The translations under genes were made by a program, and so were the position numbers. A stretch of 63,859 nucleotides of DNA, filler included, from Reticulomyxa filosa (lineage: Eukaryota > Protista > Foraminifera): NCBI GenBank assembly GCA_000512085.1. It is 18 parts of 18 records of this genome, joined end to end, with 100 filler letters (N's around TTAATTAATTAA, not from the genome) between each part and the next. Parts side by side here need not be neighbours in the genome. Positions count along the whole stretch, not along the records: positions 42,391 to 43,710 come from ASPP01028045.1; 17 more parts are not named here. One strand, given 5' to 3'. This document shows positions 42,391-44,016 of this stretch, piece by piece; positions within the stretch are counted from its first letter, which is position 1; each line of letters opens with the position of its first letter. A model generated the notes under the pieces. That model was not told where the DNA came from. It did no database searches and was given only the letters and a program-made list of their open reading frames with translations.

Positions 42391-42647
42391 TCAATCAGCC
42401 TCTTGACACCTTGCTCATGATGGGCGGGTCTTTGAAAGACGTCAGGGCTATGGCCACTTCACTTGCTGCTGCTGAAACCTATTCTGAATATCCGGAAAGT
42501 GAATATGCTGATACCATTGCTAGTGACACCATCACCGATTTGGAGTCACTCAACAGCATCAGCGATGAAGAGGTGGAAAAGGATGAGGATCATAATTTTA
42601 AAAATAATAGCCACCATTTGAAGTTACCTGTCAATCGATATGAATAA
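42391..42647 (+). CDS. Acidic C-terminal fragment of an unknown protein
   Basis: Open frame from contig start to TAA, followed by a U-rich 3' UTR-like tract. Confidence 0.5.
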
Positions 42648-42999
42648 ACACAATTTTGTTTTTGTTCTTGTTGTTGTTTTTCTTTCTGTCGTCTTCTTTA
42701 AAAAAAAAATCTTATGTCATTGTTACCATTGATATACTAATCATACACTTTTCCTTTATATAGAAGAGATTATCTATTTTGTTGTTGCTGGTGATTGTGT
42801 ATATCATCTTTTTGTCTAGTCATTGACAGTTTTTTTTCATAGTTGCTCTTTTCTAATCTATTTTCATTTTTGAGTTTTGCTTTTTTACTGGTTTACCTTT
42901 TTTGTGTCGTGCAAACTTTGGCGAACTAAACTTTTATTGTTCATATCTTTACTTGAAAATGAAATCTCTGCAACTGAACAATAGTCAAATAATATAAAA

Positions 43000-43160
43000 A
43001 TAAAAAACACCAAATTTTAACATTAATTTTATATTTAAAATAAAATATAAAAAATAAAAACATTAAATAACATTAAATAACATAAAAAACATTAAAAAAT
43101 AATTAAAAAACATTAAAATAATAAAAAAACATTAAAAAATAATAAAAAAAATATTAAAAT
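43000..43160 (+). repeat. Imperfect AT-rich tandem repeat (AAAAACATTAAA-like units)
   Basis: Repeated aaaacattaaa / aataa units directly flank the structured element. Confidence 0.7.
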
Positions 43161-43161
43161 T

Positions 43162-43471
43162 GGGGGGAACACTGATTATCCAATAATTGCAAAAGCAACT
43201 ACTGAATAACCAGTAAGAACCCTGGTCAACGCTCACTTGTCGGAAAATCCGAACTCCATATCTACTGTAAAAGAATGTTAAAAACACTCTAATACAGCAG
43301 CTACCCTAGGAAGAGAACTAGAGTAGACTATGAGAGCCGACTATCCTTATTACTTAAATGCTAGAATTAGCATTTAAGTAAAAATGCGAGCTCTATGAAG
43401 AGTAGAGCTAGAGATACAATAGTATCCTAGATACTCTTCATAAAAGTTCTCCCAAAAGGAAAAACCGGTAT
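43162..43471 (-). ncRNA. Unidentified highly structured RNA candidate (~310 nt)
   Basis: At least eight hairpins tile the region, and most non-Watson-Crick pairs are G-U on the minus strand but A-C on the plus strand. GC-richer island in AT-rich flanks with no ORF. Confidence 0.65.
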
Positions 43472-44016
43472 GAAGAAAAATAAATAAATATATTATAAAT
43501 CATGACTCAAAAGGTCATTTTATCAATTATCAATATAACACAAACTACTTTATTATATGTATTTACAAATAATATTTACTTATCCATAAAACGAAAAATC
43601 GCAATTTATATTATATTAAAAAAACATATATAATTTTTTTTTTATTATTTATTGAAATAATTATACCAAAAAACAAAAAAAGTTAAATTAACAATTAATA
43701 ATATTAAATTNNNNNNNNNNNNNNNNNNNNNNNNNNNNNNNNNNNNNNNNNNNNTTAATTAATTAANNNNNNNNNNNNNNNNNNNNNNNNNNNNNNNNNN
43801 NNNNNNNNNNTATTCCCATTTTTATATAACCCATCTATATCAACATATTATATAGCATACATACACTTGTCTTTTTTTTTCCCTTCCTTTCATCCTTTGT
43901 AACATTCGTATGTGTATTTTTTTTTTTTTTAATCTTCCGGAATTGCGCGTTTTTTTCCCCCTTTTTTTTAAAAAAATCTCAATTCTCATACATCTCACTC
44001 ATAATATATACAAAAC

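What the first reader, a model, noticed from the sequence alone, without database searches (positions are those of the whole stretch)
43162..43471. Unannotated ~310-nt multi-hairpin RNA-like element with strand-specific G-U pairing
Seen: a GC-richer, ORF-free island is almost fully tiled by hairpins (plus coordinates): 43176-43209 (15 bp, UUUU loop, 3 G-U), 43208-43227, 43240-43252, 43262-43300, 43301-43326, 43351-43380 (perfect 13 bp), ~43393-43443 (long, internal loops) and ~43445-43467. Longer-range helices on the minus strand (GCUCGC/GUGAGC, GUCGG/CCGAC, CUC-U-CAUA/UAUGGAG) nest these into multi-way junctions. Most non-WC pairs read G-U on the minus strand and A-C on the plus strand, the signature of selection on an RNA fold. 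One terminal helix favours plus. The minus-strand segment AAGGAUAGUCGGCUCUCAUAG resembles RNase P CR-I (AGGAAAGUCCGGGCUCCAUAG), but I find no convincing CR-V, and no U1-U6, U3, SRP, hammerhead or telomerase-template motif. Inference: a highly divergent RNase P/MRP-like RNA or a new ncRNA class.
Basis: partly seen in the sequence, partly recalled or inferred. Interest (0 to 1): 0.8.

Follow-up and report, generated by a model that had tools for sequence, protein, structure and literature searches.

The report
Orphan structured RNA gene in Reticulomyxa
A roughly 310-base stretch of the foraminiferan Reticulomyxa filosa genome folds, on the minus strand only, into an unusually stable multi-hairpin RNA, and a second genomic copy keeps those hairpins through compensating mutations; it matches no described RNA family and is not a recognisable RNase P or MRP RNA.

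Summary
Window 43162-43471 is an ORF-free island of 31-40% GC inside 6-18% GC DNA. The minus strand folds to -133.5 kcal/mol (z = -15.5), the plus strand to -94.4 (z = -7.5). The minus fold has 116 pairs with 16 G-U; the plus fold has 96 pairs with 2 G-U. Flanks and 244 control windows from the same genome have z near 0.

The genome is Reticulomyxa filosa. A paralogous contig (L007) covers 43162-43331. It differs at 6 of 170 bases: one in a linker, five in stems. All five keep minus-strand pairing, including one two-sided change (U-A to G-U). The neighbouring 3'UTR-like DNA is only 81% identical.

Four Rfam scans gave only noise. CR-V, CR-IV, a bulged-U P4 and the MRP GARAR loop are absent. 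The CR-I-like motif is real but sits on both strands of one helix. So RNase P/MRP membership is not supported, although the core has a P2-P3-P4-like order.

Best reading: a selected, minus-strand structured non-coding RNA of an undescribed family. Expression, copy number and function remain untested.

The parts
43162..43471 (-). Whole structured RNA element (about 310 nt; true transcript ends unknown)
   Evidence: MFE -133.5 kcal/mol, z -15.5. 116 bp including 16 G-U. The structure signal is confined to this island.
43445..43466 (-). H1: 9-bp hairpin with UUUU loop and 3 G-U pairs
   Evidence: mean pair probability 0.96. Its 3' arm GGGAGAAC can instead pair with the 3'-terminal GUUCCCCC, at +6 kcal/mol.
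43392..43444 (-). H2: 13+4+5 bp hairpin
   Evidence: pair probability 0.98.
43386..43391 (-). 5' strand (GCUCGC) of the long-range helix C1 that closes the core
   Evidence: Pairs with 43231-43236 (GUGAGC); probability 0.92.
43350..43381 (-). H3: perfect 14-bp hairpin with AUUC loop, in the position of P3
   Evidence: (I4); probability 0.97. It has no internal loop.
43326..43346 (-). CR-I-like segment AAGGAUAGUCGGCUCUCAUAG, 5' strand of the irregular core helix C2
Evidence: It matches 5 of the 7 specified positions of GNAANNUCNGNG (my count by eye) and gives no strict regex hit. It pairs with 43242-43260 in two near-isoenergetic registers.
43301..43326 (-). H4: 9-bp hairpin with 8-nt pyrimidine loop UUCUCUUC
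   Evidence: probability 0.99. The second copy changes U.G to C-G at 43322/43305.
43262..43300 (-). H5: 8+8 bp hairpin with a 2x2 internal loop
   Evidence: The second copy has a two-sided change U-A to G.U (43286/43276) and G.U to A-U (43287/43275).
43242..43260 (-). 3' strand of core helix C2 (UAUGGAGUUCGGAUUUUCC); can alternatively form the local hairpin 43240-43252
   Evidence: Identical in both copies. Its reverse complement is the plus-strand CR-I-like match, 16/19.
43231..43236 (-). 3' strand (GUGAGC) of helix C1
   Evidence: Identical in both copies.
43223..43230 (-). Single-stranded linker GUUGACCA
   Evidence: Unpaired in the MFE. It carries the only non-stem difference between the copies, at 43228.
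43163..43222 (-). H6: 21-bp hairpin (5 G-U, UUUU loop) on a 3-bp GGG/CCC base, ending in a C6 run
   Evidence: probability 0.99. The second copy changes G.U to A-U at 43202/43183.
43068..43161 (-). T-rich tract downstream of the RNA on the minus strand (T4 at 43156-43159, T8 at 43144-43151), conserved between the two copies
   Evidence: 97.9% identity against 81.2% in the 3'UTR-like region. Sequence. A role as terminator or processing region is inferred.
43485..43499 (-). TATA-like TTTATAATATATTTA, about 14-28 nt upstream of the first structured base
   Evidence: Read from the sequence. Inference only: the DNA is AT-rich, so this could be chance.
43502..43518 (-). Palindrome ATGACCTTTTGAGTCAT, a G+C-containing block close upstream; candidate promoter element
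   Evidence: Read from the sequence. Inference only.

Best explanation
Window 43162-43471 encodes, on the minus strand, a highly structured non-coding RNA of about 310 nt from the Reticulomyxa filosa nuclear genome. It belongs to no described RNA family.

About three quarters of its bases are paired. Two 5' hairpins (H1, H2) lead into a core closed by a 6-bp long-range helix. That core holds a perfect 14-bp hairpin (H3) and an irregular helix carrying two further hairpins (H4, H5). A 21-bp 3' hairpin (H6) ends in a C-run followed by T-runs.

Shown here: the fold is far beyond chance. It is specific to the minus strand. Selection has preserved hairpins H4, H5 and H6 since a segmental duplication.

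Inferred: it is a stand-alone gene. A TATA-like box and a palindrome lie just upstream and a conserved T-rich tract lies downstream. Its product most likely acts as a protein-binding scaffold (an RNP RNA) rather than through long single-stranded guide or template sequence, because it has almost none. Eight internal T4-T5 runs make a conventional Pol III transcript unlikely. It is therefore probably either a Pol II snRNA-like transcript or made by a Pol III that needs the longer downstream T8 run.
For: - Fold: -133.5 kcal/mol, z -15.5 on minus; -94.4, z -7.5 on plus.
- Pair counts: 116 bp with 16 G-U on minus; 96 bp with 2 G-U on plus.
- Localisation: the structure signal is limited to the island. 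The genome background has z mean -0.26, sd 1.37 over 244 windows.
- Composition: 31-40% GC in a 6-18% GC setting, with no ORF above 51 aa.
- Second copy: on R. filosa contig ASPP01016573.1 (L007), aligned over 43162-43331. It has 6 differences in 170 nt and no indels, while the 3'UTR-like region is 81.2% identical with 5 gap events.
- Pairing kept: RNAalifold finds 54 pairs, 3 kept through a one-sided change, 1 kept through a two-sided change, 0 broken.
- Simulation: P(no pair broken) = 0.024; P(none broken and at least 4 changed pairs kept) = 0.00015.
- Strand: the same changes read on the plus strand are A.C mismatches, and the two-sided change breaks a pair there.
- Robustness: local hairpins have pair probabilities 0.96-0.99.
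Against: - No expression data. No RNA run could be listed, so transcript, strand and ends are untested.
- Only two copies are known, and one of them is partial. The copies are paralogues inside a segmental duplication, so comparative power is small.
- The 94 nt of AT-rich DNA next to the element is as conserved as the element (97.9%). A recent gene-conversion tract could therefore explain the low divergence, though not the pattern of the substitutions.
- Contig L007 ends inside the element, which may hint at further copies (a repeat).
- Eight internal T4-T5 runs argue against the Pol III reading.
- Promoter elements are read by eye in AT-rich DNA.
- The register of the core helix is ambiguous.
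Confidence: 0.6

Rival explanations
1. The structure is a domain of a longer Pol II transcript, not a stand-alone gene. It could be a structured 3'UTR element of a convergent minus-strand gene lying beyond the piece's right edge. Alternatively it could be a primary transcript that is processed into small RNAs from the longer hairpins (H2 about 22 bp, H6 about 21-24 bp).
For: From about 42990 to 43500 the minus strand is T-rich, as the plus-gene's own 3'UTR-like region is on its sense strand (AT skew). The conserved T-rich tract downstream could be UTR or poly(A)-signal sequence. Internal T4-T5 runs are no obstacle for Pol II. H2 and H6 reach Dicer-substrate length.
Against: There is no coding sequence on the minus strand in the 240 nt to the right. 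That DNA is 11-23% GC, lower than the 24-31% of the neighbouring gene's 3'UTR-like region. The stop-to-edge distance exceeds 1060 nt. The two convergent gene pairs seen on other R. filosa contigs leave only about 280-450 nt between stops. Selection also acts on the 9-bp H4 and on H5, which are too short to be Dicer substrates.
Confidence: 0.2
2. It is the RNA subunit of foraminiferan RNase MRP or RNase P in a strongly remodelled form. In that reading GCUCGC/GUGAGC is P2, H3 is P3, AGUCGG/CCGAC is P4, and H4+H5 form a minimal specificity domain.
For: The order of elements matches P2-P3-CR-I/P4-hairpins-P4'-P2'. The CR-I-like 21-mer scores 24, and at most about 0.07% of shuffles reach 26. A 3-bp CUC/GAG pairing next to it could be P5, a feature PMC13184271 gives for MRP.
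Against: - No RNase P or MRP covariance model hit at E<=10 in three scans, including the core alone.
- No ACNNNANNNNGNNUA (CR-V) on either strand. No AGNNNNAU on the minus strand. No AGNNAU in the right place.
- No GARAR pentaloop in the core. PMC13184271 reports that loop as conserved from protists to metazoans.
- The P4-like helix has 5 contiguous pairs with the U paired, so there is no bulged U.
- H3 lacks the P3 internal loop, and there is no P1.
- 80 nt of 5' hairpins and 70 nt at the 3' end (linker plus hairpin H6) lie outside the core.
- The CR-I-like match is found on both strands because the motif is near-self-complementary.
Confidence: 0.08
3. It is a foldback or MITE-like repeat, or another multi-copy palindromic DNA element. 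Its hairpins would be a property of the DNA, with no function as RNA.
For: - Long, nearly perfect inverted repeats are present.
- An 8-bp terminal-like inverted pair GGGGGAAC/GTTCTCCC exists.
- Contig L007 breaks inside the element, as assemblies do at repeats.
- Other R. filosa intergenic DNA also holds strong single hairpins.
Against: 16 G-U against 2 G-U between strands is not expected for decaying DNA palindromes. Substitutions between the copies keep minus-strand pairs, including a two-sided change. Homology between the two copies runs on through the flank into the neighbouring gene, so the copy arose by segmental duplication, not insertion. The inverted pair is not at both ends, and no target-site duplication is visible. 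Five other paralogous loci lack the element.
Confidence: 0.08
4. The gene is on the plus strand. The conserved A-rich 94 nt (43068-43161) would then be its upstream promoter, and the RNA would start at the G6 run.
For: - There are no T4+ runs on the plus strand inside the element, and the first one downstream is at 43517-43520.
- The conserved upstream flank resembles the upstream promoters of snRNA-type genes.
- The terminal helix and the better CR-I-like match (16/19) are on plus.
Against: The plus fold is 39 kcal/mol weaker, with half the z-score. Sixteen stem positions would be A.C mismatches. The two-sided change breaks a pair on plus. The lack of T4 runs on plus equals a lack of A4 runs on minus. 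From the base counts I estimate only about one such run is expected (my arithmetic), so this is not informative.
Confidence: 0.04

Closest known systems
RNase MRP / nuclear RNase P RNA
   Same: Size class (about 300 nt). A closing helix is followed by a hairpin, then by a helix formed by a GGA-AGUC-GG-type motif and its distant complement, which encloses further hairpins. The 21-mer resembles CR-I.
   Different: - No covariance-model hit.
- No CR-V, no CR-IV and no GARAR P8 loop (features as listed in PMC13184271).
- No CR-II/III T-loops were recognised by eye; these were not scanned.
- No bulged U in the P4-like helix.
- No internal loop in the P3-like hairpin.
- No P1.
- Large extra hairpins lie outside the core.
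snRNA-type / type-3 Pol III small RNA genes (U6, 7SK, MRP, RNase P in many eukaryotes)
   Same: A stand-alone short gene in intergenic DNA. A TATA-like box lies about 25 nt upstream, a further upstream sequence block follows, and T-runs follow the 3' end directly (inference).
   Different: There are eight internal T4-T5 runs. No snRNA motifs are present: no Sm site, and no U1, U2, U5 or U6 signature in its proper context. There is no Rfam hit.
GC-rich ncRNA islands in AT-rich protist genomes (for example Plasmodium RUF6; from my own knowledge, not tested here)
   Same: A GC-richer, structured, non-coding island in extremely AT-rich intergenic DNA, next to a member of a multi-copy gene family.
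   Different: No sequence or Rfam relation. The element is about twice as long and far more base-paired. Copy number is unknown.
Hairpin small-RNA precursors (pri-miRNA clusters, hpRNA)
   Same: Several stable hairpins on one strand with G-U pairs. Two stems reach about 21-22 bp.
   Different: Most stems are 9-16 bp. The hairpins abut without linkers and are nested in a multi-branch core. Selection is seen on the short stems too. No small-RNA data exist.

Membership tests
RNase P RNA (nuclear) | Match to Rfam RNase P covariance models | tested here: not met
   No RNase P model at E<=10 on the piece, the island or the core alone.
RNase P RNA (nuclear) | CR-I consensus GNAANNUCNGNG (consensus recalled from the literature) | tested here: not met
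   No regex hit on either strand. By eye the best windows match 5 of 7 specified positions on minus (GGAUAGUCGGCU) and 6 of 7 on plus (GGAAAAUCCGAA). The looser 21-mer similarity is significant against shuffles.
RNase P RNA (nuclear) | CR-V consensus ACNNNANNNNGNNUA forming P4 with CR-I | tested here: not met
   No hit on either strand.
RNase P RNA (nuclear) | Eight-nucleotide CR-IV (AGNNNNAU) before the 3' strand of P4 | tested here: not met
   None on the minus strand. The one plus-strand hit is in an unrelated position. The nearest minus-strand string is AGUUCGGAU, 9 nt.
RNase P / MRP RNA | P4 helix with a universally bulged U | tested here: not met
   By inspection, GUCGG/CCGAC is 5 contiguous pairs and the U pairs with A.
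RNase P / MRP RNA | P3 as helix-internal loop-helix | tested here: not met
   H3 is a perfect 14-bp stem with a 4-nt loop.
RNase MRP RNA | Match to the Rfam RNase_MRP covariance model | tested here: not met
RNase MRP RNA | P8 pentaloop 5'-GARAR-3' (PMC13184271) | tested here: not met
   The only minus-strand GARAR is GAGAA at nt 21-25, inside the stem of H1 and outside the core. The core loops are UUCUCUUC and UUU.
RNase MRP RNA | Three-base-pair P5 immediately next to CR-I (PMC13184271) | tested here: inconclusive
There is no comparative support, because the second copy ends at 43331.
RNase MRP RNA | Six-nucleotide CR-IV (AGNNAU type) between P5' and P4' | tested here: not met
   AGNNAU occurs at minus nt 118 and 209 only, neither of them between GAG and CCGAC.
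Pol III type-3 gene | No internal T4+ runs; T-run terminator at the 3' end | tested here: not met
   T4 and T8 runs follow the 3' end, but there are 8 internal T4-T5 runs on the minus strand.
Spliceosomal snRNAs / box C/D and H/ACA snoRNAs / SRP RNA / telomerase RNA | Rfam models; Sm site, box C, U1 5' end, U2 GUAGUA, U6 ACAGAGA, telomere-template repeats | tested here: not met
   No Rfam hit. No motif hit on the minus strand except CUUUUAC, which lies inside the H5 stems, not in a loop; box D (CUGA) occurs on the plus strand only. There is no single-stranded stretch of 1.5 telomere-like repeats.
MITE / foldback transposon | Terminal inverted repeats at both ends, target-site duplication, many dispersed copies | tested here: inconclusive
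   The only terminal-like inverted pair is 8 bp and internal at one end. No TSD is visible. The two known copies are syntenic. Genome-wide copy number could not be searched.

The most novel reading that the evidence does not exclude
The element is the catalytic RNA of foraminiferan RNase MRP (or P), remodelled so far that CR-IV, CR-V, the bulged U of P4 and the GARAR loop are lost or replaced. Only the P2-P3-P4 topology and a CR-I-like strand would be kept. That would be the most divergent RNase P/MRP RNA known in a free-living eukaryote.
Probability: 0.07. Interest if true: 0.8.

Novelty: new variant of a known kind. Interest (0 to 1): 0.5.

Why it matters
This element is a well-supported candidate for a lineage-specific structured RNA. 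It has an extreme fold z-score, strand-specific G-U pairing and compensatory change between two copies, and it has no counterpart among 4227 Rfam families. If it is expressed, it gives a concrete entry point to foraminiferan RNP biology. It would also be a test case for how far core RNAs such as RNase MRP or P can diverge. If it proves to be a repeat, it would instead document an RNA-structured repeat family in a genome known for its repetitiveness.

Tried and rejected
- **Sequencing runs:** none was listed, so read laying could not be used.
- **Rfam:** the whole piece, the island and the core alone returned only noise such as miRNA and lncRNA models at E 0.7-9. No tRNA was found.
- **Exact-pattern scans:**
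  - The CR-I-like 19-mer in metagenome contigs gave two hits in GC-rich, bacterial-looking DNA with unrelated flanks, so these are chance matches.
  - The same 19-mer gave no hit in viral contigs.
  - A 20-mer in viral contigs gave two hits inside what look like phage coding sequences, also chance.
  - A 27-mer in GTDB genomes gave none.
- **Synteny route:** seven other contigs carrying relatives of the neighbouring protein were fetched by the time of the scan (L001, L006, L008-L010, L012, L013). None carries the element. Three further contigs (L011, L014, L015) were fetched, but the element was not searched against them, and L014 and L015 hold almost no DNA downstream of the gene.
- **Classes checked by eye and rejected:**
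  - U2: shared CCUUUUGG and AGUAUCU, but GUAGUA is absent and there is no model hit.
  - U5: CUUUUAC lies in stems.
  - U1, U3, SRP and 7SK.
  - Telomerase template: no single-stranded repeat. CUACCCUA is on the plus strand inside a palindrome.
  - SINE A and B boxes.
- **Internal direct repeats:** none.
- **Other structured spots in R. filosa contigs:** a single hairpin in L006, and a TATG microsatellite in L009 whose inverted repeats fold into a hairpin. Both are unrelated to the element.

Full report
**Setting**

Only window 42391-43710 is genome. A plus-strand ORF runs in from the left edge and ends at TAA 42645-42647. After it comes a T-rich, 24-31% GC stretch that looks like a 3'UTR. Then comes an almost pure A/T tract of 10/20-nt periodic repeats (42991-43161, 6-18% GC). 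Next is the island 43162-43471 (31-40% GC). The last stretch is AT-rich again, to the edge.

The neighbouring protein tail has relatives on NCBI contigs of GCA_000512085.1. Their sources name them Reticulomyxa filosa proteins.

**Check of the observation**

The minus strand of 43162-43471 folds to -133.5 kcal/mol. Dinucleotide shuffles average -71.7, giving z = -15.5. The plus strand folds to -94.4, z = -7.5.

The minus MFE has 116 base pairs, 16 of them G-U. The plus MFE has 96 pairs with 2 G-U. If DNA palindromes decayed neutrally, transitions should create G-U on either strand equally often. A 16:2 split has a two-sided binomial p of about 0.001 (my arithmetic).

Sliding 120-nt windows show the signal only between 43111 and 43530, with z of -4.9 to -10 on minus. 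Elsewhere in the piece z lies between -3.1 and +1.3. In 244 windows from six other R. filosa contigs, z has mean -0.26 and sd 1.37. The only other outliers are the second copy of this element, a single hairpin, and a TATG microsatellite palindrome.

The long-range helix GCUCGC/GUGAGC has probability 0.92. A 5'/3' terminal helix (GGGAGAAC with GUUCCCCC) costs 6 kcal/mol.

No ORF exceeds 51 aa.

**Comparative evidence**

No RNA run could be listed. Exact-pattern scans of metagenome, viral and prokaryotic collections gave nothing or chance matches in what look like bacterial and phage sequences.

The neighbouring protein opened a route instead. A full HMMER search found ten relatives, and their contigs were fetched. 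One of them, ASPP01016573.1 (L007), aligns to window 42392-43331 and ends there, inside the element.

Identity between the two copies, by segment:

| Segment | Identity | Gaps |
|---|---|---|
| Coding tail | 92.1% | 2 gap events (15 nt, and 35 nt of a 40-nt deletion that removes the stop region and runs on into the 3'UTR-like stretch) |
| 3'UTR-like stretch | 81.2% | 5 gap events |
| A/T tract 43068-43161 | 97.9% | 2 short gap events (3 columns) |
| Element 43162-43331 | 96.5% | none |

The six differences in the element, with their effect on the minus strand, are:

- 43228: in the unpaired linker.
- 43202: G.U to A-U in H6.
- 43287: G.U to A-U in H5.
- 43322: U.G to C-G in H4.
- 43286 and 43276 together: U-A to G.U in H5.

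RNAalifold on the two copies gives 54 pairs. Three are kept through one-sided changes, one through a two-sided change, and none is broken.

In a simulation, six random substitutions (3 transitions, 3 transversions) leave all pairs intact in 2.4% of trials. They do so while changing at least four pairs in 0.015% of trials. Read on the plus strand, the same positions are A.C mismatches, and the two-sided change destroys a pair.

So H4, H5 and H6 have been kept as minus-strand RNA helices since the duplication.

There are caveats:

- There are only two sequences, and they are paralogues.
- The 5' half (H1-H3 and the CR-I-like strand) is not covered.
- The adjacent A/T tract is as conserved as the element. 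A recent conversion tract could therefore explain the low divergence, though not the pattern of the substitutions.

Five other R. filosa paralogue loci do not carry the element.

**What it is not**

Three Rfam scans at E<=10 returned only noise. They covered the piece, the island and the 171-nt core alone, each on both strands against 4227 families. No tRNA was found.

For RNase P and MRP I tested the defining features. I used consensus strings recalled from the literature and the MRP-specific features listed in PMC13184271.

- There is no CR-V (ACNNNANNNNGNNUA) and no strict CR-I on either strand.
- There is no AGNNNNAU on the minus strand.
- No AGNNAU lies between the would-be P5' and P4' strands.
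- The only minus-strand GARAR sits in the stem of H1, outside the core.
- The P4-like helix is five contiguous pairs without a bulged U.
- H3 has no internal loop, and there is no P1.

The CR-I resemblance is statistically real. The minus 21-mer scores 24. A plus-strand 19-mer (43241-43259, 16/19 identical) scores 26, and only 0.07% of shuffles reach 26. But these two matches are the two strands of the same helix, so the resemblance says little about strand or family.

What remains is a topological likeness: a closing helix, a hairpin, and a helix enclosing two hairpins. I put RNase P/MRP at about 8%.

Sm sites, box C, the U1, U2 and U6 signatures, SINE A and B boxes and telomere-type templates are absent. 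CUUUUAC lies in stems. Box D (CUGA) occurs on the plus strand only.

**How it most likely works**

Shown: there is an RNA-level, minus-strand, selected structure.

Inferred: it is a stand-alone gene. On the minus strand a TATA-like TTTATAATATATTTA (43499-43485) lies 14-28 nt upstream of the first structured base. A palindrome, ATGACCTTTTGAGTCAT (43518-43502), lies just beyond it. T4 and T8 runs follow the terminal C-run.

The distance from the plus gene's stop to the piece edge exceeds 1060 nt without minus-strand coding. The two convergent gene pairs on other contigs leave only 280-450 nt between stops. This fits an extra, non-coding gene in the interval.

Eight internal T4-T5 runs speak against ordinary Pol III termination rules. 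That leaves a Pol II snRNA-like transcript, or a Pol III that needs long T-runs.

About 75% of bases are paired, helices abut without linkers, and the longest unpaired stretches are 8 nt. The RNA therefore looks like a protein-binding scaffold rather than a guide or template.

The H4 loop UUCUCUUC repeats the CUCUUC of the 3' arm of H2, and it is complementary to GAAGAG in the 5' arm of H2 and to GAGAA in H1. That would allow loop-helix competition. This is speculation.

**Rivals**

| Reading | Confidence |
|---|---|
| A domain of a longer Pol II transcript (3'UTR element or small-RNA precursor) | 0.2 |
| A remodelled RNase P or MRP RNA | 0.08 |
| A foldback or multi-copy repeat without RNA function | 0.08 |
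| A plus-strand gene | 0.04 |

The contig break inside the element in L007 is a weak hint of more copies, which I could not test.

**Verdict**

The RNase P/MRP label is not supported. The 'new ncRNA' reading is the best one, but it lacks expression data and wide phylogenetic support. Interest is moderate (0.5). It is a strong orphan structured-RNA candidate in a lineage for which my paper searches turned up no description of non-coding RNAs, with a small chance of being a radically divergent core RNA.

Noticed in passing
window 42393-42647 (+): C-terminal 84 aa of a protein with no Pfam domain. It belongs to a multi-copy R. filosa family (RFI_19858, RFI_09414, RFI_18047, RFI_37625 and others). 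The upstream parts are coiled-coil and give a weak Fez1 hit. Relatives at 50-66% identity occur on short contigs of JGI samples 3300030740, 3300030741 and 3300030743.
   Followed up: partly
L007:1385-1640 versus window 42392-42690: The paralogous copy has a 15-nt deletion and a 40-nt deletion that removes the stop-codon region of the neighbouring gene. Its annotated protein (P0009, 336 aa) therefore ends differently. It may be a decaying or remodelled paralogue, while the RNA element downstream stays 96.5% identical.
   Followed up: partly
window 43037-43164: An A-rich tract made of 10- and 19-20-nt periodic units (AACATTAAAT / AAAAAACATTAAAAAATAAT). The part next to the element (43068-43161) is 97.9% identical in the second copy, much more than the 3'UTR-like DNA.
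   Followed up: partly
L006:1374-1427 and L006:756-775: Another R. filosa paralogue locus has an unrelated, nearly perfect 16-20-bp hairpin in its downstream intergenic DNA (120-nt windows with z down to -9). It also has a run of about 16 C just after the stop codon.
   Followed up: partly
L009:about 670-710: A TATG/TATA microsatellite forms a perfect palindrome inside the range of a gene model. This explains that contig's fold outlier.
   Followed up: yes
L002:6425-6443, L003:11600-11618, L004:852-871, L005:712-731: Exact 19-20-mer matches to the element occur in what look like bacterial and phage contigs. In each pair the same sequence appears on two contigs with different sample numbers. 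The flanks are unrelated, so these are chance matches.
   Followed up: yes
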